The translations under genes and the position numbers were made by a program. Under the pieces are notes generated by a model. The model did not search any database, was not told where the DNA came from, and saw nothing but the letters and a program-made list of their open reading frames with translations. This document shows positions 17,623 through 64,000 of a stretch of DNA of 64,000 nt, piece after piece. Location of the stretch: IMG/VR virus record IMGVR_UViG_3300017917_002466, positions 124,001 through 188,000 of that record; one strand, 5' to 3'. How positions within the stretch are numbered: position 1 is the stretch's first letter; each line of letters starts with the position of its first letter.

Positions 17623-17632
17623 TTGATTTCTC

Positions 17633-28895: not shown

Positions 28896-29063
28896 TTACC
28901 TCGACACGGAGGGCTGTTCTACGCCAATTTCGCCCTTTGCCTGTTGTGCGATGTTGTTTTTAATTACCTTAATTTCAGCGGCGATTTCTCGTAACCGAAG
29001 ATTATTAGCTACAACAAAGCACCACAACGATAAATAAGCCAGAAAGACAAAAAACCATTTCAT
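28896..29063 (-). CDS. cassette-borne 55 aa membrane protein
   Basis: MKWFFVFLAYLSLWCFVV... Confidence 0.55.
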   Translation of the reverse strand: MKWFFVFLAYLSLWCFVVANNLRLREIAAEIKVIKNNIAQQAKGEIGVEQPSVSR

Positions 29064-29109
29064 AATCGCCGCCTATAAATCAAAGATTAAAAACCATTTC
29101 GCCTAACGT

Positions 29110-29406
29110 CTACCGCATCGCACGAAGTTGCCGCGCCCAAACCCACAACCTACGATAAACCCCTGACGGTAGATTATTGTTATTGTCTACAAAGGCTTCC
29201 ATTTCTGCGGCAATTTTGTGCTGCGGTTGTTGCACGGGGCGCTTCGCCCGAACCGTTCGGCCCGTTTCCAAATTATCCAGCGCGGTGCGGACTGCTATTG
29301 CCCCGCTGTGGCCGAGAGAATAATTGACAACGGCAACCGCTTTGCCGTTACGACATACCTCAAACGCATAGCCAGTATCTTCTATCTCATATTTGGCACC
29401 GCGCAT
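29110..29406 (-). CDS. cassette ORF
   Basis: AGGA RBS; tail ..WARQLRA shared with 30599 cassette. Confidence 0.6.
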   Translation of the reverse strand: MRGAKYEIEDTGYAFEVCRNGKAVAVVNYSLGHSGAIAVRTALDNLETGRTVRAKRPVQQPQHKIAAEMEAFVDNNNNLPSGVYRRLWVWARQLRAMR

Positions 29407-29437
29407 ATTAACATCCTATCTTTAAGGGCCGAATGGC

Positions 29438-29570
29438 GTGCAACGTTCTCGGCAATGTACGCCGTGCCTACAGGGCTTCACGGCAATATGGACACCACAC
29501 AAACCCAGTATGGTCCTTGCCAAGACGAAGCCACTCGTGATATTGGCATGGCGTACTTGCCGTGTTAGGC
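29438..29570 (-). repeat. attC-like site, near-identical to 28591-28722
   Basis: GCCTAAC...GTTGCAC. Confidence 0.85.
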
Positions 29571-29701
29571 GATGTAGAAAGCGACTCCTTAACGTCCTCA
29601 AATTTGACAAATTCACCGTCGTCGCACTCCTCCATCCGAGCATGCGTGCCATACATATCGCTCGTGACCTTATAATCGTACCGTGTCAAATTTACATCCA
29701 T
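29468..29701 (-). CDS. cassette ORF (NLTRY...G..VKF.D.KE body family)
   Basis: Body related to 32217..32474 and 31696..31962. Confidence 0.6.
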   Translation of the reverse strand: MDVNLTRYDYKVTSDMYGTHARMEECDDGEFVKFEDVKESLSTSPNTASTPCQYHEWLRLGKDHTGFVWCPYCREAL

Positions 29702-30598
29702 ATATCGCTCTCGCTTTCTATTTCGCATAACGTCTGCCACACGGTTGATCGTTACGGCCTACCTTGCCAATCACCAGATTCACGTTCAGGAACATCATAT
29801 CGCCGTTTAGATAAATCTCCATAATATGAATAGGCCGTAATGTCAACCTGTGGCTGTTGTACGTCTGTGGAAGGAGCGGATTCTTTAGTTAATGCGGTGC
29901 AGCCATGACCGACACCCTGAACACCTTGCCACTCCCACCGAGCTTGTATATAGTGACGACAATCTTTGAACATTTGCACCGCCTTATAGATCGTTTAGAG
30001 CGACTGGAATAGCGTACAACGTGTGCCAAAGTATGAAGGTGTGAAACAATTTGCGAAGCGAACATACTTTGGCTGTTGTGTGTTGGTTTTCGCTCCACAA
30101 TATTAAAAAGCAATTTGGCGATTGTAACGAGGCCAACTCAACCACCCTCGTATCCCATCGGGCGTCCCCTTTGGTGGTCTACATAGCCGTGGACGGCTTA
30201 GCCAAATTGCCTATAAATTCAAAGAGCGAAAACTTACACACAACGTATACGCTATTGTGAAGTAACTATGTTATTTAGGCGCTCCTCTAACTGTGAAATA
30301 AGCGACAATGCCTGTGGATACGACTCCATTGCTGACGGAACTGAATCCCGTAGAAACTTGAGCGCCGCCACAATAGCGTTGTTGTGCGAAGGTTTTAACG
30401 CCTCCTCACAAAACATTTTTATGCGACCCCACGCCAGTTGTTCAGACGAAGACCCTTTTGCATTAACAAGTGCGCTAACAGATGATAGTTCATTTTCAAG
30501 CATAAAAACTCCTAAATAAAAAGCGTTAAAACTTTTGCACAACGGGATCAGGCATTGCCCGACAGTTTGCGCGGTGCTTCACAAGCGATACAAACGCT

Positions 30599-30895
30599 TC
30601 ACAAAGCGCGAAGTTGCCGCGCCCATTTACTTAACTGCTCTGCACTTGGTACGCCACCGATATTTGCTATGCGCACACCATCCTCAAGCTCAGTGGCAAT
30701 TTGGGCGATAGCCGCGCTTTGTGTGTTGGTTGATGTGGAAGGAATGCCCACCTTATTTTTCTTTCGGCGGGTAATCTTTCTCCACCACGAATGAACAACG
30801 GAACAGATAATAGCAACCAATCCTATTGCCAACGCTACGCCAAGGAACACCAGCCCAAACACATCATGAAACGTCCATACGAAAATAGAACCCAT
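30599..30895 (-). CDS. cassette ORF, membrane protein
   Basis: AGGAG RBS; long hydrophobic segment. Confidence 0.6.
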   Translation of the reverse strand: MGSIFVWTFHDVFGLVFLGVALAIGLVAIICSVVHSWWRKITRRKKNKVGIPSTSTNTQSAAIAQIATELEDGVRIANIGGVPSAEQLSKWARQLRAL

Positions 30896-30954
30896 TTTTT
30901 TCTCCTTACCCGCCGAACTATTAATTCAAAAGCGGGATTTATTTTGCACAACGG

Positions 30955-31131
30955 TCAGCGCACAGCCGATGCGGTACGCTTACCATTTTTGCTACCCCGT
31001 TTCGGCTTGCGCTTGTTGTGTGCTGTTCGGCGCGACTCTAATCGCTCCCAGGCGGCCAGCTCCGCATCACCACGGGCCTCCGCCGCACCCATCACAGCAT
31101 CAAAATCATCAGGACCATAATCGTTTTTCAT
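30955..31131 (-). CDS. cassette ORF of 58 aa; basic tail shared with 6456..6761
   Basis: HNKRKPKRGSKNGKRTASAVR vs ANKRKPKRGKRSTGRTASAVR. Confidence 0.6.
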   Translation of the reverse strand: MKNDYGPDDFDAVMGAAEARGDAELAAWERLESRRTAHNKRKPKRGSKNGKRTASAVR

Positions 31132-31414
31132 TTGGCCGCCTTTACAATAACGCTCTCACGCCGAATGGCATCACAACGTTCACCGCACGCCGGATGCGGT
31201 ACTCCGTTTACGGCTGCGGGTGTTGTGCGAAGTGCGGCCCGCTTCCGCAAGTATTGGCGCGACTTCGCTACGGTGCGCCCACTGACCTTCCTTGTCAAAC
31301 ACAAACCTTGCAATTACTTTTCCACAGCAAATCTCAGTTTTCAATGAATACCACTGCAGTTTTTTTCGCGCCATTATAACCTCCAAAAGGGCCGCATTTT
31401 GCACAACGTCTGCG

Positions 31415-31663
31415 CTACTGGTGCTGTGCGCATACTAAGCAGGCATGTTTTTTACACTTTCGACTAGTAATTACACCACAGTCGTAACCAGCTCCGATGT
31501 GCGCTTCGCATGGCACCATAGCGCTGTTGTGCGATGAATTTGTTGACTCCGCCAGTGCTGCGCGAATGGTTTCCAATGCACATTTACAATCTGGACACTG
31601 GTGTTGATCCACGACTATTTGAAAATGAGCCAAGGCTTTCTTAATTTCCATTCGCGCCTCCAA
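31415..31663 (-). CDS. cassette ORF
   Basis: 5' end near-identical to that of the 28620 cassette. Confidence 0.6.
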   Translation of the reverse strand: MEARMEIKKALAHFQIVVDQHQCPDCKCALETIRAALAESTNSSHNSAMVPCEAHIGAGYDCGVITSRKCKKHACLVCAQHQ

Positions 31664-31695
31664 TATGGTTCAGCAAATTTTTCGCACAACGTATG

Positions 31696-31962
31696 CTAAA
31701 CGGCTGATGCCTTGCGCTGGATAAAATAGTCGTGAACATCTGGATACCACACACATTTACGACATTTATATAAATCCTCGTAATCGCTACCATAGTACGT
31801 TTCACATTCCTTACAGCGCAAGGTTTCAGCCTTTAGCGGTTGGTTGCCTGTTTGTGAAAGCTCCTTAGTGTCGGCAAATTTTAAATATACTCCGTCACCA
31901 CCTTGATGTATGTCGCAATCACAATCGCAACTATTAAACACAAATGTTCTGAAATTTGCCAT
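31696..31962 (-). CDS. cassette ORF with zinc-binding tail
   Basis: AAGGAG RBS; CKEC...CRKC inside attC. Confidence 0.6.
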   Translation of the reverse strand: MANFRTFVFNSCDCDCDIHQGGDGVYLKFADTKELSQTGNQPLKAETLRCKECETYYGSDYEDLYKCRKCVWYPDVHDYFIQRKASAV

Positions 31963-32216
31963 ATAATATCGCTCCTTTCACAAATTGCAACCAACGGTTG
32001 CCAAAGTATGAAGTTTACGTTTCGTAAATTTGCGAAGCGAACATACTTTGGCTGTTGTGTGTTGGTTTTCGCTTCACAATAATGTAAGGCGCGGGGCTGC
32101 ATAGGCTGAGTAGTGACCACCGCAGCATATATCTCCACCGAAAGTACGGTGAACCCTCAATTGTCACCGCGCCATATAAATTCCAAAGAGCGAAAACTTT
32201 CACACAACGGTTCGCA

Positions 32217-32474
32217 CTACTGCTGTTCGTGCCAATCGGTTCGTTTGCCAGTAAACCTACTGCACGCATGGCACGTGGGGCTGACACAACCACCTATGTT
32301 ACGTTTGCAAGATTGGCATGACAGCATAGCGCTGTTGTGCGATGAATTTAGAAGCTCCTTAATGTCGTCAAATTTAACCCAAGCCCCCTCATCGGATGCA
32401 ACCATTTGATGAAAATTATCCATAGTTTTAGTACGGTTAAACCACTCTAAATTATAACGGGTTAAATTTGCCAT
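32217..32474 (-). CDS. cassette ORF with zinc-binding tail
   Basis: 5' UTR identical to the 31696 cassette, different attC. Confidence 0.6.
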   Translation of the reverse strand: MANLTRYNLEWFNRTKTMDNFHQMVASDEGAWVKFDDIKELLNSSHNSAMLSCQSCKRNIGGCVSPTCHACSRFTGKRTDWHEQQ

Positions 32475-32868
32475 ATAATATCGCTCCTTTCACAAATTGC
32501 AACCAACGTTTACGCAACGGGTGAAGTCGCCACAACTTTTAGATTATGACAATACCCTTGCTTTAATGTACAATGATCCGATAAACACTTTAAACTACAC
32601 TCGATTTCACCCTTGCGTTGTTGGTTGTCTGTAAAATTTTCTACCTTAGATGCAAGAGCGGCACACCATACGAGATGGGTATACTGCTCCTTATCTAACG
32701 TAGATTTACAACCAATACTATCAAACCATTCTCTACAAGTGCCGCTCATATAAACTCCAAAGAAAATTTTATTGCAACCAACGTTTGACAAATGGTGAAG
32801 TCGTGTACTCACGATTTAGGCTTTTCGTTACCATTTGTTTGTTGTAAGATGTTTATGCCACTTCCTTA

Positions 32869-33165
32869 TTATCCGTTGGCGCATCTTTGTTTTTTGATAT
32901 AGTCTAAAAGTGTAACCTGTTCTTTTTCTGGTAACTGTTCAATCACTTTTTTATTGAAAAAATATTCATCCGTAAAACCACCAACAAAATCTAACCATTT
33001 TCCTGAAATCTTTGGTAATGGTAACTCGGTGCCCCGATAAGATGCAGACATAAATATCTCTGCTGGTACGCCGTTTAATTTCCGGTAAAGTGTTCCCCCA
33101 CCACTTTTCTGATGTTCCTCTGGATACGGTGGGTTCCAAACGCCTGTGAATTTTAGTTTTTGCAT
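32869..33165 (-). CDS. cassette ORF ending before its attC
   Basis: AGGAG RBS; 98 aa. Confidence 0.65.
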   Translation of the reverse strand: MQKLKFTGVWNPPYPEEHQKSGGGTLYRKLNGVPAEIFMSASYRGTELPLPKISGKWLDFVGGFTDEYFFNKKVIEQLPEKEQVTLLDYIKKQRCANG

Positions 33166-33496
33166 TTTTTCTCCTGCGCCAACATCTGAATATCAGAGTG
33201 GCATAAATTTCTTACAACGTTCACCGCACAGCCGATGAATTGCGCTGCCAGTTACAAGAAAGATTTTTTACACATACATCACCAAACCCTGCTTGATAAC
33301 TACACATTCCACTATATGCACAAAGCAATTTTTCGGCTTGCGGTTGTTGTGGGATGTGGAGCGCAGGTTCCTTAGTGTCCTGCGCGGCACGCTTCGCCCA
33401 AAAATCAATCCATTCATCACGAGTAATAGCTGGTTTAGATGGCATAATGTGACTTTCTATGAGCCGCGCCTATCATATAGACCTGCGCGGAATTTA

Positions 33497-33560
33497 CCAC
33501 AACGTCTGCGCAACTGCGCGTAGTTGGGCCTTGACAATTACGACGCTTGCGCTGTTGGTG
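33497..33560 (-). repeat. attC-like site of first cassette of array 2
   Basis: CACCAAC agcgcaa...ttgcgcagac GTTGTGG; R'' matches the cassette start GTTGGTG. Confidence 0.85.
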
Positions 33561-33795
33561 GATGTGCCTGCCGACTCCGCTTGCTCTGCGGGCGAACCGG
33601 CGTCAACAACAGCGCGAGGAAATGATCGGCGGCGCGATTGCCTATAGTGTGCCGTTTGGCCGATGAATCACGGCTACCCTCCCAACGAGCACAGTCGTAA
33701 TACGCCATGGCGATGTTGGCCTGATAGGCACGGTACAGCCCCTTGTCGCGCCGTAACGCCCTTGTGAATACCTTGAACGCCTCTTGAAACTCCAC
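33538..33795 (-). CDS. first cassette ORF of array 2, paralog of 6456..6761
   Basis: AGGAGG RBS; GTG start. Confidence 0.7.
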   Translation of the reverse strand: MEFQEAFKVFTRALRRDKGLYRAYQANIAMAYYDCARWEGSRDSSAKRHTIGNRAADHFLALLLTPVRPQSKRSRQAHPPTAQAS

Positions 33796-33851
33796 AGGCG
33801 CCTCCTTATTGTTCGCCCGCCTACAATCGCGTTCTCGGCAGGCATTTACAC

Positions 33852-33891
33852 CAACTAGTTAAATGATGTCATTCCCTTGTCTAACTCTTTG
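33852..33891 (-). other. attI-like recombination site, copy 2
   Basis: CAAAGAGTTAGACAAGGGAATGACATCATTTAACTAGTTG, identical to 7641-7680. Confidence 0.8.
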
Positions 33892-34095
33892 ATTTTCATA
33901 AAATTTTTTAAACTTATTGCTCAATTTATCTAATGGATAACCGTCTTGTATTAAAGCCCTTATTACAGCATACCGAATATATTTAGAACGAGTAATTTTT
34001 AGCTTTTCTCCTTGATGCAAACAACCAGTTGCTAAAACTGGTTCTAAATATATCTTATAGTCACTTCTTATCTTATCAGACCATTTTGCTTTCAT
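33859..34095 (-). CDS. small basic protein, possible ribbon-helix-helix DNA-binding protein, overlapping the attI-like site
   Basis: ITRSKYIRYAV motif; promoter TTGACA-N17-TATATT at 34102-34130. Confidence 0.5.
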   Translation of the reverse strand: MKAKWSDKIRSDYKIYLEPVLATGCLHQGEKLKITRSKYIRYAVIRALIQDGYPLDKLSNKFKKFYENQRVRQGNDII

Positions 34096-51181: not shown

Positions 51182-52108
51182 CTATTTGGTGAGAAGAGCT
51201 TCCAGTTTGTCAAGACGCTCCCAAACATCTTTAACAGAAATGTACTCTGTAGTCTGTTTTTTCATTCCACTCTCACTACCATACCATTGTTCAATAGCAT
51301 TAGCGAGAAGAACTTTAAGTTCTCCTGTTCTTGGTTGTGGGGAAATTGTGGTTTGATTAAGAGATTTCTTTTCAAGAATATCCAATCTTTCAAGAGCATA
51401 CTTCTCAAACCTTTCCCAAGTTCCCCAAGTACCTTCTCTCATACTTTTGGCTTCTTCTTTATTATTCATCAAATCAATAGTTCCGTTATCCAAAACCTGA
51501 TTGATTTGGTCAATGAGCCTCAATATTTGAGAAGCTTGTTTAACATCCATTCCAAACTGTTCAAGCATAAATTGTCTCTTAGGGTTTTCGGTTTTACCTC
51601 TTTTAATATCATTTCTCATACGATGAAGCTGTGCAAAAGCATAACCCTTAAAAGCCATTACTGTTCTAAGAGATAAAAACTTCTCAGCATTATCTCTTAG
51701 CATCCAAGCAATATCTGTACCAAAGGTAACCAAGTGTCTTCTAACAAAAAGACATTCAATAAGATTTGGTGAACCTTTAATTCCAGTAAGATAAAAAAAT
51801 CTAACTAAACTATTCCACTCTCCTTCAACATCAGTCTTACCATCAGGAGTAAGAATTCTACTTTTTTCTCCTTTGACTTCTTTACTTTCAAAATTGGGAA
51901 CATTATCAAAACCAATTACATATCCGTACTTTTGAGGAAAAAGATGGACTTCTTGTGGCATAACTAATGCGACAATATCAATATCTGATTGCGGAGTATT
52001 AAGTCCATAAGCTTGGCTTCCGACAATACACTCATAAAGTAAATTTTCTCTAATCCAAAGTTCTTGTTTTTGAAATTTTTCTTGAACAAATAAATCCGTG
52101 TAAATCAT
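51182..52108 (-). CDS. DNA polymerase beta superfamily nucleotidyltransferase
   Basis: GSQAYGLNTPQSDID, PNLIE, FKGYA..Q. Confidence 0.85.
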   Translation of the reverse strand: MIYTDLFVQEKFQKQELWIRENLLYECIVGSQAYGLNTPQSDIDIVALVMPQEVHLFPQKYGYVIGFDNVPNFESKEVKGEKSRILTPDGKTDVEGEWNSLVRFFYLTGIKGSPNLIECLFVRRHLVTFGTDIAWMLRDNAEKFLSLRTVMAFKGYAFAQLHRMRNDIKRGKTENPKRQFMLEQFGMDVKQASQILRLIDQINQVLDNGTIDLMNNKEEAKSMREGTWGTWERFEKYALERLDILEKKSLNQTTISPQPRTGELKVLLANAIEQWYGSESGMKKQTTEYISVKDVWERLDKLEALLTK

Positions 52109-53988: not shown

Positions 53989-55188
53989 TCACTTCGTGTT
54001 TCCTGCTCCTTCAACACCCAAGTCAAGCGCAAGGTCTTTGGCTGTCTTGGCTGTCAGGAGATTGACAAGTTCATTAGCCCCTGAAGCCGACCTGCTATTA
54101 CCTTCACCCATGACAACAGTCGGAACCCAGTTACCAGCATAACCCTTGATAGCTTCAGCATATGCCTTGTTGATTTCAACAATTGCCTCAATCTTCTGTT
54201 CAAGGGCTCCGTTAGCCTGCATAACAAGCCTCTTATATGATGCCTCACCTTCTCCACGAAGGATGTTTGCACGCTTCTCCTGCTCGGCGGTCTTTGCTTC
54301 AAGTGTAGCAACTTCAAGCTTCTGCTGAGCTTCTGTTACTGCCGTTGCTTTAATTACTTCTTGATCCCACTTTGCCTTGGCTGCATCGGCCTCTCCGTTC
54401 TTGGCAACAGTGATAGCCCTCTGCTCGGCCTTCTTGGCTTCTGCTATGGAAGTTTGAACGTCCATTGTAATCTGTTGCTGTTGCTTAATCTGGTCTTCAA
54501 CAGCCTTGTCATACGGAAGCTGGTCAATCGCAAAGTTGAAGGTACGGATTCCGAAGTCCTTGATGGCTGACTCTTCCTGACGGGCAAGAAGTCCACTACT
54601 ATCTTTGACAATCTCAACCAAAGTTACAGTCTTCTCTGCACCTGTCATTTGGTCATTGGTCTTAACTTCTTTAGAGATAGTCTTGTACACACCATTGGAA
54701 ATCTGGTCTTCTACATATGAGATAAGGTAGTTGCGCTTCTCGGCATAAGACTCCTTGGAACTCATAAGAGGGCCAGTCATATAGATTGCCTTGTTCACAA
54801 TAGTCTGAATCAACTGAGTTTCAAGGGATGCCTGATTACTAAACTTATTCTGAACCTTGGTAAGATAATCCTTATTCAGTGGCATTTCATACTGAACTGA
54901 TCCCATCATTGTTCCGTGTCCACCATCATTGAAACGAACGGAAGTCTTGAACTGATAGATGGAACGCTTCTTGTACTTGGTGACCTTTCCGAAACCTTGC
55001 CACTTGATACCTGCATCGGTATACCAAGCGAGCTTTCCTGCGATGGGTGACTGAATACAAGCGATTTCGTCAGTATCTACGTTCTCAAAGATGTTACCCG
55101 CAAAAGCGATAACAATGATACCGACGACTACGATACTAACGATAGATGCAATTACTCCAACCGGATTGCGCTTCAATTGCTGGGTCAT
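53989..55188 (-). CDS. SPFH/Band 7 domain membrane protein
   Basis: N-terminal TM, VRFNDGG, coiled coil with EA repeats. Confidence 0.8.
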   Translation of the reverse strand: MTQQLKRNPVGVIASIVSIVVVGIIVIAFAGNIFENVDTDEIACIQSPIAGKLAWYTDAGIKWQGFGKVTKYKKRSIYQFKTSVRFNDGGHGTMMGSVQYEMPLNKDYLTKVQNKFSNQASLETQLIQTIVNKAIYMTGPLMSSKESYAEKRNYLISYVEDQISNGVYKTISKEVKTNDQMTGAEKTVTLVEIVKDSSGLLARQEESAIKDFGIRTFNFAIDQLPYDKAVEDQIKQQQQITMDVQTSIAEAKKAEQRAITVAKNGEADAAKAKWDQEVIKATAVTEAQQKLEVATLEAKTAEQEKRANILRGEGEASYKRLVMQANGALEQKIEAIVEINKAYAEAIKGYAGNWVPTVVMGEGNSRSASGANELVNLLTAKTAKDLALDLGVEGAGNTK

Positions 55189-56322: not shown

Positions 56323-57489
56323 TTATATCTTATCTAAGCAACTTTTGAGATAATTAAAATAATCTTGATCTTCTGTCATAGACTTGGAAATATTATTGCT
56401 AAGTTTACAAACAGGTAGTCCATTAACAGAAATCTGCTTACAAACATTTTGTAGTGGCTCAAGTCCAAGATCATTAGATAAATAAGTTCCAATCCCGAAC
56501 ATAGTTTTTATTCTATGATTAAAACGAATAGCTAACTCAAACATCTTTGGAAAATCAAGTCCGTCAGAAAAAATCAATACCTTATTTTTTGGGTTAATTC
56601 CCAAAGCATTATAGTGATTTAGTACCATCTCACCCCAGACTATAGGATCACCAGAGTCGTGCCTCAAACCAGAACTTCTATTAGCAATATCTGGTGATAG
56701 ATCAAGTAACATTTTTTTATCACCTAACGTATCAGACAAAAGAATTCCTAAATCATTTCCATAAAAATCTAACCAAGTTTCAATCGCCATTTTCTGACTG
56801 TTCATAGGATGAGTAAAGGCTTGGAACAAAGTAAAAAACTCGTGTGCCATTGTGCCTATAGGTTTGATATTGAAACGCCTTGCCAAATCCACATCACTAG
56901 TTCCAATAATAACTCCATTATCAGCAAGATTTTTTGTTATGAACTCGTGCCATTCTGTAGTGTACGCTCTCCTACCCCCAAATTCTGCAATCAAAGGAGT
57001 ATAGCCATTCTTGCGTTCAAATTCTTTGAACATCGCAATTTTCTGAACAAGCCTATTTCTACCTTCAGAAATAAGATTATCATTAATAGGATTTACATTC
57101 CTACTATAAACCTCATGTACAATTTTCAAAACAAATATTTCAAATAGACTTACGTTTGTTAATGGTCCTTCCATTTCAATAGCCAAATTCCCATCTTTCT
57201 CACCAACATTAATATAATGCCTTTTGAGTCTGAAATCATCAAGATAGTTTATAAAACATTCACTAAAATAAGGAATAACAGCAAGATATTCAAGTTCATC
57301 ATTAGTAAAATTCAAATCACATAAACAGTCGATCTCATCTTCAATCTCTTTTTTAAATGGTAAGAGATTGATTCCGACATTTCTACACTTGAATTTATAC
57401 TTTGCTAATACATTAGGAAACTTCTGAAAAAAGATATTCAACATCGTCAGTTTGTAATAGTCTTGACTCAATAAACTTTTGATTATCAT
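56323..57489 (-). CDS. pncB: nicotinate phosphoribosyltransferase
   Basis: DYYKLTM, EFG.RR, GTMAHE, RHDSGDP, IFSDGL, FGIGT. Confidence 0.92.
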   Translation of the reverse strand: MIIKSLLSQDYYKLTMLNIFFQKFPNVLAKYKFKCRNVGINLLPFKKEIEDEIDCLCDLNFTNDELEYLAVIPYFSECFINYLDDFRLKRHYINVGEKDGNLAIEMEGPLTNVSLFEIFVLKIVHEVYSRNVNPINDNLISEGRNRLVQKIAMFKEFERKNGYTPLIAEFGGRRAYTTEWHEFITKNLADNGVIIGTSDVDLARRFNIKPIGTMAHEFFTLFQAFTHPMNSQKMAIETWLDFYGNDLGILLSDTLGDKKMLLDLSPDIANRSSGLRHDSGDPIVWGEMVLNHYNALGINPKNKVLIFSDGLDFPKMFELAIRFNHRIKTMFGIGTYLSNDLGLEPLQNVCKQISVNGLPVCKLSNNISKSMTEDQDYFNYLKSCLDKI

Positions 57490-58185
57490 TCAATTCCTCT
57501 TTCTTACTTCAATACACTTTCAATACGATTCTTTATTGCGGTCTTTAATTGAAGTTCCTTTTTATACATCTAATATAAATCAAGGTAAAGGATTTGTCAA
57601 GTTATTTCTTTCTTGCTTCTCTAAATTGTTTCAATTGTTCAAGCTTACCATTTAAAAACTTAGCTGGTAAAAAGAAAATATCTCCACACACTTGAAGAAA
57701 TTCCACAATAGGTTCAAGTGTTTCAATTGCAACAACAAGTTCTTTATCAGCAATTGCTTCACCAACACGAAGTCTATTCAAAACATCCGAAGTTGTTTGA
57801 TGTTCGGATTTCATCTATCCTCCCTTCCAAAAGTCTCCATCCAATATGTTAAAATTTTAATAGATTCTTTATTATTAACTTTAAACTTCTTTTCAATATA
57901 TGGAGCAGCTCCAAACATGTTAGTTTTACCTGACTCTCTTAATTCATCAAGAAAGTCAAGATGATCTTGAGTTACATAATCTGGTCTTGACATTTAATCA
58001 TTCTCCATTGGTAGTGATTCTACAATTAATTTTCTTCCCCACTTAATATCCAGTTCTTCAATAGTAAAAGCTCTTCCTTTATCAATTTCATTTAGTTGAT
58101 GTACAATTTTGATTTCATCATTATCAGCATAATGAATTTTAGCAGGAAAATTAATCATGACTTAGACTCCTTCGTTTAGAATAAT

Positions 58186-58554
58186 TTAAATTACCCTCAT
58201 ATAAAGAGTTTTGAAATACTTACCGTATTCAATACTATCGTCTATCATTAAATCAATATTTTGTTGCTTACAATATTTGGCTTTAGCATAGTTCCAATCT
58301 TCATTTTTGAAAAATGGATCATTAGGAGTCTTCCAATAAACTTCTTTACCTTGCGAAAGAAGATCGTCTGCTATGCTATAAAAATGAGTGTATTGAATTC
58401 CAAATTCTTTTAATTGAGATTCTATTTCAGGAGTTCTTTGCGAACCAGTTATAATGTAAACATTATGACCTTGTTCAATCAACCTTTTAGTAAAGGTTGT
58501 AAAAAACTTTGGCTTTGCATCAATTGTGTTATGTATGTCTACTCCGAACCGCAT
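58186..58554 (-). CDS. HAD-superfamily hydrolase-like protein
   Basis: FGVDIHNTI, IITG, IDLMIDD. Confidence 0.65.
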   Translation of the reverse strand: MRFGVDIHNTIDAKPKFFTTFTKRLIEQGHNVYIITGSQRTPEIESQLKEFGIQYTHFYSIADDLLSQGKEVYWKTPNDPFFKNEDWNYAKAKYCKQQNIDLMIDDSIEYGKYFKTLYMRVI

Positions 58555-59818
58555 AACAACTTTAAGCCTTTCTAAACCAATCCCACAAATAGTTCTTTCC
58601 CTTAAACTCTGGCTGGAGACTAAAGCTGTCTATTGTATTGTACTCTCCGTACACATCAACCCAATCCCCTCGGAACCCTTTGATTTTGTAGGTCTTGTTT
58701 TTGAAGAAAGCACATCCGACTGGGTCAGAAATTTCTGGAACATCTCGTTCTGCAAGGAGAAAATCATTTGGAACAATTACCTCAAAGCATTCCATAAACG
58801 TATCCTTTCTATGTAACTAATATAATATCTGTGAAAGGATTTGTCAATGGTTATTTGAAATATTCATAACCATTTGTGCCAAAGCTCCAATATCATCTGA
58901 AATAAAATCAAGGGCTTTAGAAAGTTCTCTTCTTGTTACCATTTTATCTGGACTTCTTTTCATCTTTTCTACAAAGCTATCCCAATCTTTTTGTCTAAGT
59001 TCAGAATCTTTATTTTCCGTTTTCATAGTAAACTTCATTCCACTTCTGATTCTTCTTTCTTGATATTGAACTTTTTGCCTTTCACGCTATTGCCGTGAAC
59101 GCATTCGTGTTCAATGTTGTTGGGCTTTGAACCTTGACACCAACGATAGTTCTTAGTGTAGGGAGCATAAACTGGACATTCACAACACTTCATAGAAACC
59201 TCCTATTCTGAAATTATATCAAACTGGTCACCGATTTTATTCAAAGTATTGGCAAGTTGTTTGGCCAAAGACTTTAGCCATTCCTCAGACCTACCATTCA
59301 TTACCCTGTCTTGTTCTTCTTCTGATAAGTCTTCAAAGACAACATTAGCATACTTCTTGGTATCTTCGTTCAAAGTCCTGAAATAAATGCCCGAAAGTTT
59401 TCTACGTTCTTTAGCCATTTTCTAATCTCCTTTATCTGTTTCATTAAGGATTCTATTAGCCCTACGTTTAACATTACCCGGCTTCTTATACATCATTTTC
59501 AAATAATCTTCAGCAGAAATTGAAGCACTCGAGACAGTAGGACGATAAGTACCAGAAACTGTTCTACCATCCATCGTAGTTGCTGTCAAAGGATTAAAGC
59601 CATTGTCATACATTCTATTATAATGATCTACTTCTTTCCTTATATCTTCAATGTAGTCTGTATTCTTCTTAGCCTTCTCAATCACTACTTTCATTGTAGG
59701 AGTTACTGTTTTCGGTGGCCTTGGCTTAGGCTTCGGAAGCATTGCCTTGATTGTTTTCAATTCTTCAAGAAGATTCTTGAAAGTTGAATCAAGGAAATCA
59801 ACATACTTCAAGTAAAGC

Positions 59819-60427
59819 TTAATCATATAATTCACCTTCAATTTTAAAAAAATTTCTACCAATAAAAGAATTAAAAATTAACCAAGCTTTTGCACTTATT
59901 TTATTATTTGGATTTTCTAAAATTTCTTGAACTTTATTTTTGTCGGCTATAATAATTTCTATTTCTTCACTTGATTCATTATTTTTATTTGAGATTTCTC
60001 CTTCAGCTTCACAAAAAACAATTGAAATTGATTCATCTGAAAGACCCGCGCTGTTTATAATAAATGGACTTATATGTTTTATTTTTGTCACATTTAGTCC
60101 AACTTCTTCAAAAAATTCCCTACGAGCAGCTTCTTCAATACTTTCATTTTTGTCAATTAATCCTGCTGGCAGAGAAAATTCATAATCCTGAAGTGGAACT
60201 CGGAACTCTTTGATAACTACAAGCCTCAAATCTCTTTGATATCCTGCACCAACTGGCATTGTAATCCATCCCTTATCAACAACAGCCGCAATATAAACTG
60301 CCTTCATTCCGTTTGGTCTAGAACACCAAGTCCAATAATTTGTTTGATTTTTTTTATTAAGATATTCAGTTGCAAGTAAATCAAGAAATTGTGTTTTAAT
60401 TAGTGGTTTAGTTCTCAATATTTTCAT
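59819..60427 (-). CDS. NUDIX hydrolase (ADP-ribose pyrophosphatase-like)
   Basis: PAGLIDKNESIEEAARREFFEEVG Nudix box; EFRVP; SAGLSDE. Confidence 0.9.
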   Translation of the reverse strand: MKILRTKPLIKTQFLDLLATEYLNKKNQTNYWTWCSRPNGMKAVYIAAVVDKGWITMPVGAGYQRDLRLVVIKEFRVPLQDYEFSLPAGLIDKNESIEEAARREFFEEVGLNVTKIKHISPFIINSAGLSDESISIVFCEAEGEISNKNNESSEEIEIIIADKNKVQEILENPNNKISAKAWLIFNSFIGRNFFKIEGELYD

Positions 60428-61004
60428 AAAGCTTTTCCTTTTTAATAAAACGTACAATTTTTTTATTTGTCAATGCAGTAGCACAATTAAAATTACCCCG
60501 ACTCAAAAGCTTTCTTATATAAGTAGAACTACATTCACAATTTTTTATAAGCAACATTTGATGTGGCTTAATTAAATACCAAGTTTCAAGATGTTGTTCG
60601 ATATAATCGCCTCTTTCAAAAATAATAAATGGAACTGATTGTATTAATGATTCATAATTAGCCCAAGTATTAATATGGTCTGCACAGTCCCTTCCTATAA
60701 TAACACTAAAATTATATTTTTCAAACATAAAACGAAGAATAGCTATCATATCATACATACGACCACTTATATTCATTTCTTCATATCGCTTAACCTTAAT
60801 ACGACCAAATAAACTAGGAAATATTAATTTACACATTTTAATTCTATGTTCAAAAGATACTTGATTATTTTTATGTGGATGGTTATAAGTAGGAAGTACC
60901 CAAACTTCATTAACAAGATTCTTTTCCAAACAAGCTTTTACAATTGCTAGATGTGAAATGTGGGGTGGATTAAAAGAACCCCCTAGTATTCCGATCTTTT
61001 TCAT
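60408..61004 (-). CDS. nadD: nicotinate-nucleotide adenylyltransferase
   Basis: GGSFNPPH..H, IIG.D, SSTYIR. Confidence 0.9.
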   Translation of the reverse strand: MKKIGILGGSFNPPHISHLAIVKACLEKNLVNEVWVLPTYNHPHKNNQVSFEHRIKMCKLIFPSLFGRIKVKRYEEMNISGRMYDMIAILRFMFEKYNFSVIIGRDCADHINTWANYESLIQSVPFIIFERGDYIEQHLETWYLIKPHQMLLIKNCECSSTYIRKLLSRGNFNCATALTNKKIVRFIKKEKLYENIEN

Positions 61005-61012
61005 ATTATTCT

Positions 61013-61321
61013 TTACGGAAGAATGATACCACTCTTAGTCTTATTACCAACTGTTCCTGGTTTTCCACCCGTAATTACTGATACAATCTGCTGAAAGTTA
61101 TGGTTCAGAGCATCCATATTATGCATCATCGTTACTGACATTTGAGCCAAACCTTCAATGTTTCCAGAAACGAACTCAACAACTTCCAAGAGTTCGGACT
61201 TGGTAACAGTTGCATCAGGATTATCTTTCAAATCCTGAACAAAAGCATCCCACTTAGCTTTGCGGGCTTCGTATTCTTTCTTCATTTCCTCTTTGGTCAT
61301 TTCCTTCTGTGGCTGTTCCAT
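61013..61321 (-). CDS. hypothetical protein, paralog of 58844..59038
   Basis: WD.FV......PD..VT..EL....F.S..I..LAQM shared. Confidence 0.65.
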   Translation of the reverse strand: MEQPQKEMTKEEMKKEYEARKAKWDAFVQDLKDNPDATVTKSELLEVVEFVSGNIEGLAQMSVTMMHNMDALNHNFQQIVSVITGGKPGTVGNKTKSGIILP

Positions 61322-61344
61322 TTTAGCTTCTTGGTATGATGATT

Positions 61345-62127
61345 TTATGTCTTATTAAGTTTACAGATTGGTGGCATATTCATTTTATGAAAACTATTAT
61401 TATGTCTCTTAACATAAATTGTTAAAATTTCTTTTTGTCTATCTGTTAATTCTATAAACATTCTTTCATAAACTTTTACTGGCAAATATGAATACTTTTC
61501 ATAATATTCCATTGCCCATTCAAGTTCAGGATAAGTTGCACCTATCTGATCTTCATCCGAACGATCATCTTCCCATAATCCGTCTGTAGGTTTTGCTTCA
61601 ACAATCTCTTTATTAATATCAAAATGTTTAGACAAATCCCATACTTCAGTCTTCAATAAATCACCAATTGGACTAATATCAACTCCACCATCTCCATACT
61701 TTGTAAAAAAACCTACACCAAAATCTTCAACTTTATTTCCAGTACCAGCTACAACATACCCATAACTATTAGCAAAGTTATACAAAGTCACCATTCTTAA
61801 ACGCGATCTGGCATTTACTAAAGCTAAATCTGAAATTGCATCAAATGGAATACTTTTTTTCCATACTTCAAAAGTTTCCGTCAAATCAACCTCAAAAGAA
61901 GTAACATTCGTAAAATTCCTTTTCAACCAATTCATATGGTTATGGGCTCTATCTAAATGAGATTTTGGTTGATGAATTGGCATTGAAACAACAATAACGG
62001 GTTTTTTAGTTTTAGCACAAAGAGTACTAACTAATGCAGAGTCAACCCCACCACTAATACCAATAACAAAACCATTGTAACTCTGTAGCCAATTAACAAT
62101 TTGTTTTTCAACTTTAATGCAGTCCAT
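61345..62127 (-). CDS. nadE: NH3-dependent NAD+ synthetase
   Basis: GISGGVDS, N.RSRLRM, GTGNK.E, GFFTKYGDG, PTDGLW. Confidence 0.93.
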   Translation of the reverse strand: MDCIKVEKQIVNWLQSYNGFVIGISGGVDSALVSTLCAKTKKPVIVVSMPIHQPKSHLDRAHNHMNWLKRNFTNVTSFEVDLTETFEVWKKSIPFDAISDLALVNARSRLRMVTLYNFANSYGYVVAGTGNKVEDFGVGFFTKYGDGGVDISPIGDLLKTEVWDLSKHFDINKEIVEAKPTDGLWEDDRSDEDQIGATYPELEWAMEYYEKYSYLPVKVYERMFIELTDRQKEILTIYVKRHNNSFHKMNMPPICKLNKT

Positions 62128-62144
62128 AACACTTTATTTTCGTA

Positions 62145-62675
62145 TTAAAGTTTTGCTACTGCAAAGTGCGCTCCAGCAGCGCGCATTTCTTTGATTGCTA
62201 CTTCGGTAGTTTCTGGAGCAACCCCAGCAATTGCATTCTCAAAGACGTAAGTCTTAATCCCAAGTTTACAAAGACCAAGAACAGCCGCCTTCACACAGTA
62301 GTCAGTGGCAACTCCAGCGATCCAAGCATCAGTAATCTTATTCTTTTTCAACCAATCTACAATCTCCTTGCTTCCAAGTTCTGGATGAAAAACATCATAA
62401 GTCTTTTTATTAAAAACCACTGCTTTATTAGCGGCACATTCTATTATACTAGCTTGTCCGCTGGTTTCTGTTATACAATGAGGTGGAAAAATCTTAAACT
62501 CTGGATCGTTGACATCGTGACAGTCCATTGTCTTGATAAGAAGAATATTGTCTTCTTTAACCATTTCTGTAATTTTGGCAAGAACTGGCCTAATTTTATC
62601 GGTATTCGGAACAGCCAGTGTTCCACCAAAAAAGAAATCATTTTGACAATCAACTAGAACAATTACCTTTTTCAT
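62145..62675 (-). CDS. pncA: nicotinamidase
   Basis: VDCQNDF..GGTLAV, PPHC, GVATDYCV. Confidence 0.9.
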   Translation of the reverse strand: MKKVIVLVDCQNDFFFGGTLAVPNTDKIRPVLAKITEMVKEDNILLIKTMDCHDVNDPEFKIFPPHCITETSGQASIIECAANKAVVFNKKTYDVFHPELGSKEIVDWLKKNKITDAWIAGVATDYCVKAAVLGLCKLGIKTYVFENAIAGVAPETTEVAIKEMRAAGAHFAVAKL

Positions 62676-62741
62676 ACTATATACTCCTTTGTTGAGTTCA
62701 CAATAATATAATATCTTGTAACAAGTTTGTCAAGGACAATC

Positions 62742-63172: not shown

Positions 63173-63275
63173 TCATAGAATGTAGACCTTGACTGTTGTT
63201 TCACCAAAACATTCGTTAATCATCTTCTCAACGATTGACCACTCACCATTGGTCAACCCACAACCAATCTTTATA
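63173..63275 (-). pseudogene. macrodomain C-terminal remnant
   Basis: KIGCGLTNGEWSIVEKMINECF...VKVY matches the macrodomain (P)xIGCGLxGGxW motif. Confidence 0.6.
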
Positions 63276-63552: not shown

Positions 63553-63656
63553 TATAAATACAAGTAGAAGTTAAAAGACAGCGTAGGCATACGTTTCTTT
63601 GCTCACTCAAAGATTATTTTAACTTCACTAACATAAACCTAGTGAGAGGTATATCT
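63553..63656 (+). ncRNA. TATAAATA promoter plus structured pseudoknot leader RNA, copy 7
   Basis: gaagttaaaa/ttttaacttc; tctttg-ctcact-caaaga; agtgag(agg). Confidence 0.8.
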
Positions 63657-64000
63657 ATGCGTCCTAAAATTATCAAAGATGAATTTATCCAGAAAGCTAA
63701 TTTTATTCATAATAATAAATTTAATTATGATTTAGTTGTTTTTAACAACGCAAATGATAAAATAACTATCAAATGTAATGATTGTCAAAATATATTTATT
63801 CAAAGATTAAGTTCACACATAGAAAAAAATCACCCTAAAGGATGCCCAAATTGTGCAATAAAACAACAATCCAATGTTCGTTTATATAAAGCATCAAACA
63901 AATTTCATAAAACTATTCAAATTAAACAACCAGATATTGATTTTTCAAAAGATACTTATAGTGGTTGGAATAAGCCTTATAAATGTATTTGTAAAAAATG
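63657..64000 (+). CDS. free-standing endonuclease-type protein with zinc-ribbon repeat, runs off the window
   Basis: MRPKIIKDEFIQKANFIHNNKFNY...C..C...GCPNC, same N-terminal family as 12265..12957. Confidence 0.7.
   Translation, partial: MRPKIIKDEFIQKANFIHNNKFNYDLVVFNNANDKITIKCNDCQNIFIQRLSSHIEKNHPKGCPNCAIKQQSNVRLYKASNKFHKTIQIKQPDIDFSKDTYSGWNKPYKCICKK

What the first reader, a model, noticed from the sequence alone, without database searches (positions are those of the whole stretch)
56323..62675. Complete deamidating NAD+ salvage route (PncA-PncB-NadD-NadE) plus NUDIX in a phage
Seen: all four enzymes and an ADP-ribose pyrophosphatase-like NUDIX within 6.4 kb, with a macrodomain remnant upstream. 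Established: described phage NAD+ reconstitution pathways NARP1 and NARP2 are two-enzyme amidated routes that counter NAD-depleting defences such as Thoeris and SIR2-type systems. Inference: this four-step Preiss-Handler-type set could be an alternative route rebuilding NAD+ from nicotinamide and ADP-ribose.
Basis: partly seen in the sequence, partly recalled or inferred. Interest (0 to 1): 0.6.

Follow-up and report, generated by a model that had tools for sequence, protein, structure and literature searches.

The report
Phage nicotinamide-to-NAD+ salvage gene module
A 254-kb pond phage carries intact-looking genes for all four steps that turn nicotinamide back into NAD+, plus an ADP-ribose-splitting enzyme; this is a real, conserved module and a plausible but untested way to resist NAD+-destroying bacterial defences, though similar phage gene sets are already published.

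Summary
On the minus strand lie PncA (62145-62675), NadE (61345-62127), NadD (60408-61004), an ADP-ribose-pyrophosphatase-like NUDIX (59819-60427) and PncB (56323-57489). All keep their catalytic motifs. The "macrodomain remnant" is also real: 63176-63271 is the orphan 3' end (32 codons) of a Macro gene that is intact in a related phage.

The genome is a complete 253.7-kb T4-like jumbo phage from a pond metagenome. The same module, in the same order, occurs in at least three related uncultured phages. A similar gene set occurs in Agrobacterium phage Atu_ph07 and Sinorhizobium phage Phosso.

Strong sigma-70-type promoter motifs (36 in the window against 0.09 expected) precede PncA and PncB. The genome has no prs, NAMPT, PnuC or PncC. 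A Tad6 Thoeris inhibitor, an ADP-ribosyltransferase and an NAD-dependent ligase lie 4-12 kb upstream.

My reading is a working nicotinamide-to-NAD+ route in which ADP-ribose is recycled through the host's Prs. It probably buffers NAD+ against NADase defences, but that role is untested.

It is not new in kind. Preiss-Handler clusters in "NAD-jumbo phages" were described in 2024, and the counter-defence idea is already in print.

The parts
62705..62733 (-). Sigma-70-type promoter-like site P1 (TTGACA-17-TATATT), 30 nt before the PncA start
   Evidence: the motif occurs 36 times in the window against 0.09 expected, and 51 times in the genome. None fall in the two large terminal gene blocks (518-48,901 and 206,737-253,409); the first of these holds the baseplate wedge gene.
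62145..62675 (-). PncA, nicotinamidase (176 aa); step 1, nicotinamide -> nicotinate + NH3
   Evidence: PF00857 90.6 bits. Best PDB matches are nicotinamidases 1ILW/1IM5 and 3PL1. Triad D9/K90/C127 and metal ligands D51/H53/H66 align with D10/K94/C133 and D52/H54/H71 of the P. horikoshii enzyme. 74% and 55% identical to the relatives' copies.
61345..62127 (-). NadE, NH3-dependent NAD+ synthetase (260 aa); step 4, NaAD -> NAD+
   Evidence: TIGR00552 166.7 bits against 63.65. SGGVDS PP-loop present. PDB 3FIU and 2E18 match at E 1e-31 to 1e-33. Only 32-35% identical to the relatives' NadE but 45-55% to cyanophage and pelagiphage NadE, which indicates replacement in place.
61013..61321 (-). orf102, unknown small protein between NadE and NadD
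   Evidence: No Pfam or PHROG match. Low-confidence Atlas model with no informative neighbours. 41% identical to a 110-aa ORF lying between NadD and NUDIX in L024.
60408..61004 (-). NadD, nicotinate-mononucleotide adenylyltransferase (198 aa); step 3
   Evidence: TIGR00482 114.9 bits against 112.45. Motifs GSFNPPHISH and SSTYIR present. Best PDB matches are NadD structures 1KAM, 3DV2 and 2QTR.
59819..60427 (-). NUDIX hydrolase, ADP-ribose-pyrophosphatase-like (202 aa from the ATG at 60427); overlaps the NadD 3' end by 20 nt
   Evidence: Complete Nudix box. AlphaFold model pLDDT 94.5. Foldseek top hits are NUDT5 (TM 0.73-0.75), then bacterial ADPRases and NudE. 68 homologues found, with R37, R76, E104, E108, E132 and E154 invariant across the 48 aligned.
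59422..59862 (-). orf146, unknown; start codon uncertain; not found in the relatives
   Evidence: No family match. No counterpart in L024 or L026.
59035..59418 (-). Two small conserved ORFs (71 and 52 aa) of unknown function
   Evidence: 87% and 81% identical to ORFs in the same position in L026. No family match.
58819..58847 (-). Promoter-like site P2 (same motif), 24 nt before the 77-aa ORF at 58562-58795
58186..58554 (-). orf122, minimal HAD-fold phosphatase-like protein (NT5C / PNKP-phosphatase-like); first motif reads D-I-H-N-T
   Evidence: phrog_13623 at E 8e-20. Atlas structural neighbours are NT5C 5'-nucleotidases and the PNKP phosphatase domain, TM 0.70-0.74. 54% and 50% identical copies in L024 and L034.
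57602..58158 (-). Three small conserved ORFs (54, 60 and 70 aa) of unknown function
   Evidence: 57-71% identical to ORFs in the same order in L026/L027.
57572..57600 (-). Promoter-like site P3 (same motif), 83 nt before the PncB start
56323..57489 (-). PncB, nicotinate phosphoribosyltransferase (388 aa); step 2, nicotinate + PRPP (+ATP) -> NaMN
   Evidence: PF17767 and PF04095. NF003704 417 bits against 379; TIGR01514 362 against 269.55. PDB 1YIR matches at E 5e-73, with GTMAHE at 212-217. It is the only NAPRTase/NAMPT-family gene in the genome.
63176..63271 (-). Remnant of a Macro-domain gene (last 32 codons, no start, preceded by stops)
   Evidence: tblastn of the L026 Macro protein, residues 127-158: 53% identity, E 3e-5. 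Reading frame inspected. The L026 protein passes Pfam Macro at 27.3 bits against 22.

Best explanation
This is a working, phage-encoded NAD+ salvage module.

Proposed mechanism:
1. Three sigma-70-type, probably early, promoters drive the module.
2. PncA deamidates nicotinamide.
3. PncB joins nicotinate to host-made PRPP.
4. NadD adenylylates NaMN.
5. The NH3-dependent NadE amidates NaAD to NAD+.
6. The NUDIX, translationally coupled to NadD, splits free ADP-ribose into AMP and ribose-5-phosphate. The host's Prs and adenylate kinase can return these to PRPP and ATP.

The two entry substrates, nicotinamide and ADP-ribose, are exactly what NADase effectors (SIR2, TIR and similar) release. The most likely benefit is therefore keeping NAD+ up when the host fires an NAD+-depleting abortive-infection defence.

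Shown here: gene identities, catalytic motifs, the ADPRase-like fold, conserved synteny and the promoter motifs.
Inferred: enzyme activities, NaMN preference of NadD, early timing, and the counter-defence benefit.
For: - Family assignments and intact catalytic residues for all five enzymes.
- The NUDIX model matches ADP-ribose pyrophosphatases over its full length.
- Module order is conserved in L024, L026/L027 and L034 at 47-75% identity for PncA, NUDIX and PncB; NadD is 49-54% in L024/L026 but only 25% in L034. Catalytic motifs checked in L024 and L026 are kept.
- The NadE slot was refilled by a different NadE lineage rather than lost.
- The same enzyme set was assembled independently in Atu_ph07 and Phosso. 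There the NUDIX, adenylyltransferase and isochorismatase genes are adjacent.
- The promoter motif occurs 36 times against 0.09 expected, sits directly before PncA and PncB, and is absent from the two large terminal gene blocks, one of which holds the baseplate wedge gene.
- Entry is specific to nicotinamide: the genome has no NAMPT, PnuC, PncC or prs.
- Conflict context: a Tad6 type I Thoeris inhibitor (PF25188, E 1.4e-36) and an ART-PolyVal gene lie 12 kb upstream. Macro and NADAR genes sit inside the relatives' modules. Distant NUDIX homologues sit beside PARP plus ADP-ribosylglycohydrolase, or NADAR.
- Precedent: classical salvage enzymes (NARP2) and PnuC+NadR (NARP3) do abolish NADase defences (10.1101/2024.02.11.579819; PMC13464706).
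Against: - There is no expression or activity data, and no RNA run holds the sequence.
- From established knowledge, the route costs PRPP plus about three ATP per NAD+. Bacteria such as E. coli that have pncA, pncB, nadD and nadE are still depleted by NADase defences, so the phage copy would need much higher flux.
- Tad6 may already block Thoeris upstream, which would make the module redundant for that system.
- In this phage the Macro gene has decayed and NADAR is absent, so ADP-ribose conflict functions are dispensable here.
- Conserved synteny with an NAD-dependent ligase fits a plain supply role equally well.
- PncA and NUDIX score below NCBIfam equivalog cut-offs.
Confidence: 0.5

Rival explanations
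1. It is a general auxiliary metabolic module. It raises NAD+ supply for phage replication whether or not a defence fires. That supply would serve redox metabolism, the phage's own NAD-dependent DNA ligase and its ADP-ribosyltransferase, for example in niacin-dependent or slow-growing pond hosts.
For: - A LigA-type ligase (641 aa) lies about 3.4 kb upstream on the same strand, and this linkage is conserved in L026.
- An ART-PolyVal gene is present.
- Jumbo phages commonly carry NAD+ synthesis together with NAD+-consuming genes (PMC11662467).
- NARP2 also overproduces NAD+ without any defence present (10.1101/2024.02.11.579819).
Against: - LigA releases NMN, not nicotinamide, and the phage has no PncC, NadR or PnuC to reuse it.
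- By my estimate from general knowledge, ligation demand is tiny next to a cell's NAD+ pool.
- This reading does not explain the ADP-ribose hydrolase, the Macro and NADAR genes in relatives, or the neighbouring Tad6.
Confidence: 0.35
2. It is mainly an ADP-ribose conflict module. The NUDIX, with Macro and NADAR in relatives, removes ADP-ribose, ADP-ribosyl adducts or ADPR-derived immune signals. The NAD+ enzymes only mop up the by-products.
For: - Macro and NADAR genes lie inside the relatives' modules.
- NUDIX homologues sit next to PARP, ADP-ribosylglycohydrolase or NADAR in other phage-like contigs.
- Phage enzymes that degrade ADPR-based signals and feed NAD+ synthesis are known (PMC13232231).
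Against: - In this phage Macro is a remnant and NADAR is absent, while all four NAD+ enzymes are kept and NadE was even replaced.
- The four-enzyme core is the conserved part.
- No evidence here shows that the NUDIX acts on cyclic ADPR signals.
Confidence: 0.1
3. The genes are recently captured host genes carried as passengers, with no function in infection.
For: All five are ordinary bacterial enzyme families. The closest cellular NUDIX homologue (52%) is on a Bacteroidales-type contig.
Against: - GC content of 28-39% matches the 33.5% phage genome.
- No DNA-level match was found.
- The best bacterial matches come from different lineages for each gene.
- Synteny is conserved across phages that have diverged to 50-75% protein identity, with catalytic motifs kept and their own promoters.
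Confidence: 0.03

Closest known systems
Preiss-Handler clusters of 'NAD-jumbo phages' (PMC11662467, e.g. Kuafu_71 pncB-nadD-nadE)
   Same: A jumbo phage over 200 kb carrying clustered pncB, nadD and nadE that complete the nicotinate-to-NAD+ route. NAD-consuming genes (NAD-dependent ligase, ADP-ribosyltransferase) are in the same genome.
   Different: This module adds PncA, so entry is from nicotinamide, and an ADPRase-like NUDIX. It comes from a different lineage (a T4-like pond phage, not the gut Kuafu/Houyi clades). That paper is purely bioinformatic and does not single out the five-gene set.
Gene sets of Sinorhizobium phage Phosso (PV764938) and Agrobacterium phage Atu_ph07 (MF403008)
   Same: Both have NadE, PncB, a NUDIX, a cytidylyltransferase-like adenylyltransferase and an isochorismatase-family hydrolase. 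In Phosso all five lie within about 6 kb. The NUDIX is adjacent to the adenylyltransferase.
   Different: Proteins are only 24-30% identical, and the NUDIX and adenylyltransferase are undetectable by tblastn. Gene order differs. In Atu_ph07 NadE lies about 85 kb away. This looks like independent assembly of the same function.
NARP2 (Vibrio phage KVP40 Nampt + Nmnat/Nudix)
   Same: It uses classical salvage chemistry from nicotinamide, PRPP and ATP, depends on host PRPP, and pairs an adenylyltransferase with a Nudix function. Here that pairing is two overlapping genes rather than a fusion.
   Different: NARP2 has two amidated steps via NMN. This module has four steps via nicotinate, NaMN and NaAD, with no NAMPT-type enzyme. 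NARP2 is experimentally shown to defeat Thoeris and DSR2; this module is untested.
NARP1 (Adps + Namat)
   Same: It would recycle both NADase products, nicotinamide and ADP-ribose.
   Different: The genome has no Prs-like Adps and no NAMPT-like Namat. ADP-ribose would be broken down to AMP and ribose-5-phosphate rather than pyrophosphorylated and re-joined directly.
NARP3 (PnuC + NadR, PMC13464706)
   Same: It is a phage-borne NAD+ restoring pathway built from ordinary bacterial salvage parts.
   Different: NARP3 imports nicotinamide riboside. This genome has no PnuC, and the entry substrate here is nicotinamide.
Bacterial pyridine salvage pathway I (PncA-PncB-NadD-NadE)
   Same: The same four enzyme families, with the same catalytic motifs.
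   Different: Here the genes are phage-encoded, clustered, under phage promoters, of mixed ancestry, and linked to an ADPRase. Related phages add Macro and NADAR genes.

Membership tests
Nicotinamidase PncA (isochorismatase-like cysteine hydrolase) | Isochorismatase-family domain | tested here: met
   PF00857 90.6 bits against a cut-off of 27.
Nicotinamidase PncA (isochorismatase-like cysteine hydrolase) | Asp-Lys-Cys catalytic triad plus Asp/His/His metal site, which separates nicotinamidases from other isochorismatase-like hydrolases | tested here: met
   D9/K90/C127 and D51/H53/H66 align with D10/K94/C133 and D52/H54/H71 of 1ILW/1IM5. The residue roles come from my knowledge of that structure.
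Nicotinamidase PncA (isochorismatase-like cysteine hydrolase) | NCBIfam equivalog score (PRK11609) | tested here: not met
   86 bits against a cut-off of 174. This shows a divergent sequence, not a different fold.
Nicotinate phosphoribosyltransferase PncB | N-terminal and catalytic NAPRTase domains, with equivalog-level score | tested here: met
   PF17767 and PF04095. TIGR01514 362 bits against 269.55; NF003704 417 against 379.
Nicotinate phosphoribosyltransferase PncB | Conserved His of the ATP-coupled phospho-enzyme (GTMAHE) | tested here: met
   GTMAHE at 212-217, aligned to 1YIR. The role of the His is from knowledge of Salmonella PncB.
Nicotinate phosphoribosyltransferase PncB | Nicotinate rather than nicotinamide as substrate | not testable with these tools
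   HMMs place it with NAPRTases, not NAMPT. An enzyme assay is needed.
NadD nicotinate-mononucleotide adenylyltransferase | Equivalog score plus the GxFxPxHxxH and SxTxxR nucleotidyltransferase motifs | tested here: met
   TIGR00482 114.9 bits against 112.45, a marginal pass. GSFNPPHISH and SSTYIR are present.
NadD nicotinate-mononucleotide adenylyltransferase | Preference for NaMN over NMN | not testable with these tools
   Inferred only from the co-occurrence of PncA, PncB and NadE.
NH3-dependent NAD+ synthetase NadE | NAD_synthase domain with SGGxDS PP-loop, and no glutaminase domain | tested here: met
   PF02540 160 bits; TIGR00552 166.7 against 63.65. SGGVDS at 25-30. The protein is a single 260-aa domain. 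The full-length equivalog PRK13980 is not reached (178 against 255).
ADP-ribose pyrophosphatase (NUDT5 / NudF / NudE type NUDIX) | Complete Nudix box GX5EX7REUXEEXGU | tested here: met
   Residues 89-110 of the 202-aa protein.
ADP-ribose pyrophosphatase (NUDT5 / NudF / NudE type NUDIX) | Two-domain fold: N-terminal beta-sheet domain plus Nudix domain | tested here: met
   Model pLDDT 94.5. NUDT5 matches at TM 0.73-0.75 over about 200 columns, followed by bacterial ADPRases and NudE.
ADP-ribose pyrophosphatase (NUDT5 / NudF / NudE type NUDIX) | NCBIfam scores for NudE, NudF or YffH/AdpP | tested here: not met
   51.9 against 169, 35.4 against 248 and 39.7 against 79.55.
ADP-ribose pyrophosphatase (NUDT5 / NudF / NudE type NUDIX) | Proline about 15-16 residues after the Nudix box (a marker I recall from the Nudix literature) | tested here: not met
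   Ser and Ala occupy those positions in the protein sequence. The marker is from memory, so it carries little weight.
ADP-ribose pyrophosphatase (NUDT5 / NudF / NudE type NUDIX) | Hydrolysis of ADP-ribose to AMP and ribose-5-phosphate | not testable with these tools
   Needs a substrate panel.
NARP1 | Prs-like Adps together with NAMPT-like Namat | tested here: not met
   No Pribosyltran_N match in the genome. The only PF04095 gene is a PncB-type NAPRTase.
NARP2 | Nicotinamide phosphoribosyltransferase (Nampt) together with Nmnat | tested here: not met
   No NAMPT-type gene. The adenylyltransferase is NadD-type.
NARP3 | PnuC transporter together with NadR | tested here: not met
   No NMN_transporter match.
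'NAD-jumbo phage' with Preiss-Handler pathway (PMC11662467) | Phage genome over 200 kb encoding pncB, nadD and nadE | tested here: met
   253,664 bp with terminal repeats, and all three genes present.
Phage NAD+ reconstitution counter-defence (functional class) | Restores NAD+ and phage plating under an NADase defence | not testable with these tools
   Only circumstantial context is available.
Macro domain | Recognisable Macro domain | tested here: not met
   No Pfam Macro match in the genome at E<=1. Only a 32-codon 3' remnant is left, homologous to the intact Macro gene of L026.

The most novel reading that the evidence does not exclude
The module is a fourth, mechanistically distinct phage NAD+ reconstitution pathway. 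It would be a deamidating, four-step route coupled to an ADP-ribose pyrophosphatase. Under early promoters it would out-run SIR2- or TIR-type NADases and rescue infection. It would have been assembled independently in at least two jumbo-phage lineages.
Probability: 0.4. Interest if true: 0.6.

Novelty: new member of a known kind. Interest (0 to 1): 0.4.

Why it matters
If the module does counter NADase defences, it adds the deamidating Preiss-Handler route to the list of ways phages rebuild NAD+, alongside NARP1, NARP2 and NARP3. It would show that even the bacterium's own long salvage route can work as a counter-defence when placed under phage control.

The comparative picture gives a defined, cloneable candidate set for that test:
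- a conserved five-enzyme core;
- optional Macro, NADAR and HAD-like genes;
- a NadE gene swapped in place;
- a Tad6 homologue in the same genome.

If the module is only a supply function, it is one more example of jumbo-phage metabolic autonomy, which has already been described.

Tried and rejected
- Megablast of the 6.4-kb region against INPHARED found no match, so no close cultured relative exists.
- tblastn of the NUDIX against INPHARED found no match. Its relatives were found only in metagenome proteins.
- A Pfam Macro search of the whole genome was negative even at E<=1. It would have wrongly dismissed the macro remnant, which showed up only by comparison with a relative.
- NARP1, NARP2 and NARP3 membership is rejected: no prs/Adps, NAMPT or PnuC.
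- Also absent from the genome: SIR2, NADAR, ADP-ribosylglycohydrolase and PncC.
- orf102 and orf146 have no family or structural lead.
- orf122 is HAD-fold, but its second catalytic Asp is replaced by His, so I did not assign it a role in the pathway.
- Rfam found nothing in the window.
- The run search found only the pond sample that is probably the source, and no RNA. I laid no reads.
- The host is unresolved. The closest cellular NUDIX homologue is on a Bacteroidales-type contig, but the phage's promoters and Shine-Dalgarno sites (AAAGGAG-like) do not look Bacteroidota-like.
- Several INPHARED hits (Acinetobacter phage MD-2021a, and Listeria, Staphylococcus and Enterococcus fragment records) look like bacterial DNA. 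I did not count them as phage examples.
It was rerun from files.

Full report
**What is there**

The window is bases 124001-188000 of a 253,664-bp viral record with terminal repeats. The genome is 33.5% GC and has 36 tRNAs. It carries T4-like replication and baseplate genes: a split DNA polymerase, UvsX (27-29% identical to T4-like phages), a DnaB-type helicase and a baseplate wedge. The only run that holds the sequence is a pond metagenome, probably its source, and no RNA run was found.

In the flagged 6.4 kb every gene is on the minus strand. In the direction of transcription the order is:
- PncA (62145-62675)
- NadE (61345-62127)
- a 102-aa unknown ORF
- NadD (60408-61004)
- NUDIX (59819-60427)
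- about ten small ORFs
- PncB (56323-57489)

Family scores:
- PncB passes two NCBIfam cut-offs: 417 bits against 379, and 362 against 269.55.
- NadD passes TIGR00482 narrowly: 114.9 against 112.45.
- NadE passes TIGR00552: 166.7 against 63.65. It is the single-domain, NH3-dependent type.
- PncA passes only the Pfam isochorismatase model. Its best solved relatives are nicotinamidases.
- The NUDIX passes only Pfam NUDIX. Its nearest named families are NudE, YffH/AdpP and NudF.

**Are the enzymes intact?**

Alignments to solved structures show the expected residues.
- PncA: D9/K90/C127 plus metal ligands D51/H53/H66, matching 1ILW/1IM5.
- PncB: GTMAHE, matching 1YIR.
- NadD: GSFNPPHISH and SSTYIR.
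- NadE: SGGVDS.
- NUDIX: a complete Nudix box.

The NUDIX most likely starts at the ATG at 60427. That gives 202 aa, matching homologues of 192-195 aa that begin MKI, and it overlaps the end of NadD by 20 nt. An AlphaFold model built on 48 homologues has pLDDT 94.5. Its best Foldseek matches are human NUDT5 (TM 0.73-0.75 over the full length), followed by bacterial ADP-ribose pyrophosphatases and NudE. The equivalog cut-offs are not reached. A downstream proline that I recall as an ADPRase marker is also absent. I therefore call it "ADPRase-like" and treat the substrate as inferred.

**The macro remnant**

A Pfam Macro search of the whole genome found nothing. However, a related contig (L026) has an intact 158-aa Macro gene two to three genes upstream of PncA (27.3 bits against 22). 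Its last 32 residues align to window 63176-63271 on the minus strand at 53% identity. In the window this stretch is preceded by stop codons and has no start. The rest of the gene, and one neighbouring gene, have been deleted.

**Relatives**

NUDIX homologues led to contigs with the same module.
- L024, a 25.8-kb contig labelled as a Petrotogales MAG but phage-like: PncA ... NadE-NadD-(110 aa)-NUDIX-Amidase_2 ... HAD-like ... PncB ... RlaP.
- L026/L027: LigA ... DUF6557 ... Macro ... PncA-NadE-NadD-NUDIX ... NADAR ... PncB.
- L034, a 264-kb IMG/VR contig: PncA-NadE-NadD-NUDIX ... HAD-like-PncB.

Identities to L026 and L024:

| Protein | vs L026 | vs L024 |
|---|---|---|
| PncA | 74% | 55% |
| NadD | 54% | 49% |
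| NUDIX | 55% | 60% |
| PncB | 75% | 68% |
| NadE | 35% | 32% |

The NadE proteins of L024 and L026 are 58% identical to each other. The window's NadE is instead 45-55% identical to NadE of cyanophages, a pelagiphage and a 642-kb uncultured phage. So the NadE slot was refilled by a different lineage, which argues that this step is needed. Catalytic motifs are kept in the relatives.

The variable parts of the module are Macro, NADAR, the HAD-like gene, Amidase_2 and orf146.

Further afield:
- Phosso has NadE, PncB, NUDIX, an adenylyltransferase and an isochorismatase-family gene within about 6 kb.
- Atu_ph07 has the NUDIX-adenylyltransferase-isochorismatase trio with PncB 3 kb away.
- The 735-kb phage LR756501 has PncB-NadE-TonB receptor-PnuC-NadR-PncA.
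- Rumen-type IMG/VR contigs have PncB next to NadE.
- In INPHARED, PncB is rare: 15 of 50,697 records, some of them doubtful.

**Regulation**

The motif TTGACA-N17-TATAWT occurs 36 times in the window against 0.09 expected. It occurs 51 times in the genome, all between 55 and 194 kb. None fall in the two large terminal gene blocks (518-48,901 and 206,737-253,409), and the first of these holds the baseplate wedge gene. Copies sit 30 nt before PncA, 24 nt before a 77-aa ORF, and 83 nt before PncB. I read these as three host-RNA-polymerase transcription units, probably early. The timing is inference by analogy with T4.

**What the genome lacks and has nearby**

The genome has no prs/Adps, no second NAPRTase or NAMPT, and no PnuC, SIR2, NADAR, ADP-ribosylglycohydrolase or PncC. 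Three conclusions follow:
- Entry is from nicotinamide or nicotinate.
- PRPP must come from the host.
- NMN released by a ligase cannot be reused by phage enzymes, unless NadD accepts it.

Upstream, outside the window, lie the following:
- a 641-aa NAD-dependent DNA ligase, about 3.4 kb from PncA;
- a CCA-adding-type enzyme;
- an ART-PolyVal ADP-ribosyltransferase;
- directly beside that, a Tad6 homologue (PF25188, E 1.4e-36).

Tad6 binds ThsB of type I Thoeris (PMC13728456).

Distant NUDIX homologues in other phage-like contigs sit beside PARP plus ADP-ribosylglycohydrolase, or beside NADAR. This supports ADP-ribose as the family's substrate.

**Interpretation**

The best-supported reading is a working nicotinamide-to-NAD+ route in which ADP-ribose is broken to AMP and ribose-5-phosphate for reuse through host Prs.

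The two inputs are the two products of NADase effectors. The surrounding genes deal with ADP-ribose conflicts and Thoeris. NARP2 and NARP3 show that ordinary salvage enzymes can defeat NADase defences (10.1101/2024.02.11.579819; PMC13464706). I therefore favour NAD+ buffering against depletion defences, at about even odds.

The main rival is plain NAD+ supply for replication. The conserved ligase linkage and the general habits of jumbo phages (PMC11662467) support it. Two further points, both from general knowledge, count against the counter-defence reading:
- The route is ATP-costly.
- Bacteria with the same native route are still depleted by NADases.

**Novelty**

The kind is known.
- "NAD-jumbo phages" with complete Preiss-Handler clusters were reported in 2024 (PMC11662467).
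- The NARP1/2 paper foresaw further phage NAD+ routes.
- The counter-defence idea for phage pncB/nadD/nadE is in print (PMC13384950).
- GenBank already annotates most of these genes in Phosso.
- I found no experimental test of the deamidating route.

What is new here is a further lineage with a well-defined five-enzyme core, its optional ADP-ribose genes, the replacement of NadE in place, and the promoter layout.

Noticed in passing
L004:11617-12141 (-) and L004:11066-11620 (-), i.e. G000 198066-199141, about 12 kb beyond PncA and outside the window: A Tad6 homologue (type I Thoeris inhibitor; PF25188, 126 bits, E 1.4e-36) lies directly next to an ART-PolyVal ADP-ribosyltransferase and a CCA-adding/poly(A)-polymerase-type gene.
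   Followed up: partly
window 61345-62127 (-): The NadE gene has been replaced in place. It is 32-35% identical to the NadE of syntenic relatives, which are 58% identical to each other. It is 45-55% identical to cyanophage and pelagiphage NadE.
   Followed up: partly
window 1143-18263, both strands but mostly minus: There are 26 copies of the TTGACA-N17-TATAWT promoter-like motif, one every 0.3-1.5 kb, each before a small ORF. Many share an extended GGGCTTGACAAA...TGTATATTA consensus. This looks like a dense early-gene region.
   Followed up: partly
window 26000-34000: An island of 46-48% GC sits in a 33.5% GC phage. It has no ORF over 180 aa, at least nine minus-strand ORFs of 92-100 aa, and diverged direct repeats spaced 0.8-2.8 kb. 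It looks like an array of paralogous small genes. No Rfam family matched.
   Followed up: partly
window 58186-58554 (-): orf122 is a minimal HAD-fold protein resembling 5'-nucleotidases and the PNKP phosphatase domain (TM 0.70-0.74). Its first motif reads DIHNT, with His where the second Asp is expected. It is common in phages and conserved in L024 and L034. A possible nucleotide phosphatase sitting inside an NAD module is worth an assay.
   Followed up: partly
window 63642-64000 (+), continuing to G000 188406; and L004:2404-3084 (+): Two plus-strand ORFs interrupt the minus-strand run between the ligase and PncA. One has DUF4379 zinc-finger and PvuRts1I-like domains; the other is an HNH endonuclease. 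Both are absent from the syntenic relative L026, so they are probably homing-endonuclease insertions.
   Followed up: partly
G000 108207-108280 (-), outside the window: ARAGORN calls a tRNA with anticodon CTA (amber-reading, labelled Pyl) among the 36 tRNAs. The NAD module reads cleanly under table 11, and I named no other genetic code.
   Followed up: no
L013:18396-19751 (+) and L014:684-2081 (+), i.e. G000 58396-62081; L014:12726-16229 (+): The T4-type DNA polymerase is split into two ORFs about 0.9 kb apart. The ribonucleotide reductase large subunit is unusually long (1167 aa) and matches its family in two separate stretches. Both suggest inserted elements.
   Followed up: no
L026:7662-8156 (+) and L026:2301-2777 (+) (related phage contig): A relative carries an intact NADAR gene (172 bits) between NUDIX and PncB, and an intact Macro gene upstream of PncA. 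Both are missing or decayed in this phage.
   Followed up: yes
window 51182-52108 (-) and 53989-55188 (-): Downstream of the module lie an RlaP-type nucleotidyltransferase of the RNA-repair pathway family, which is conserved in L024, and an SPFH/Band-7-like protein.
   Followed up: no
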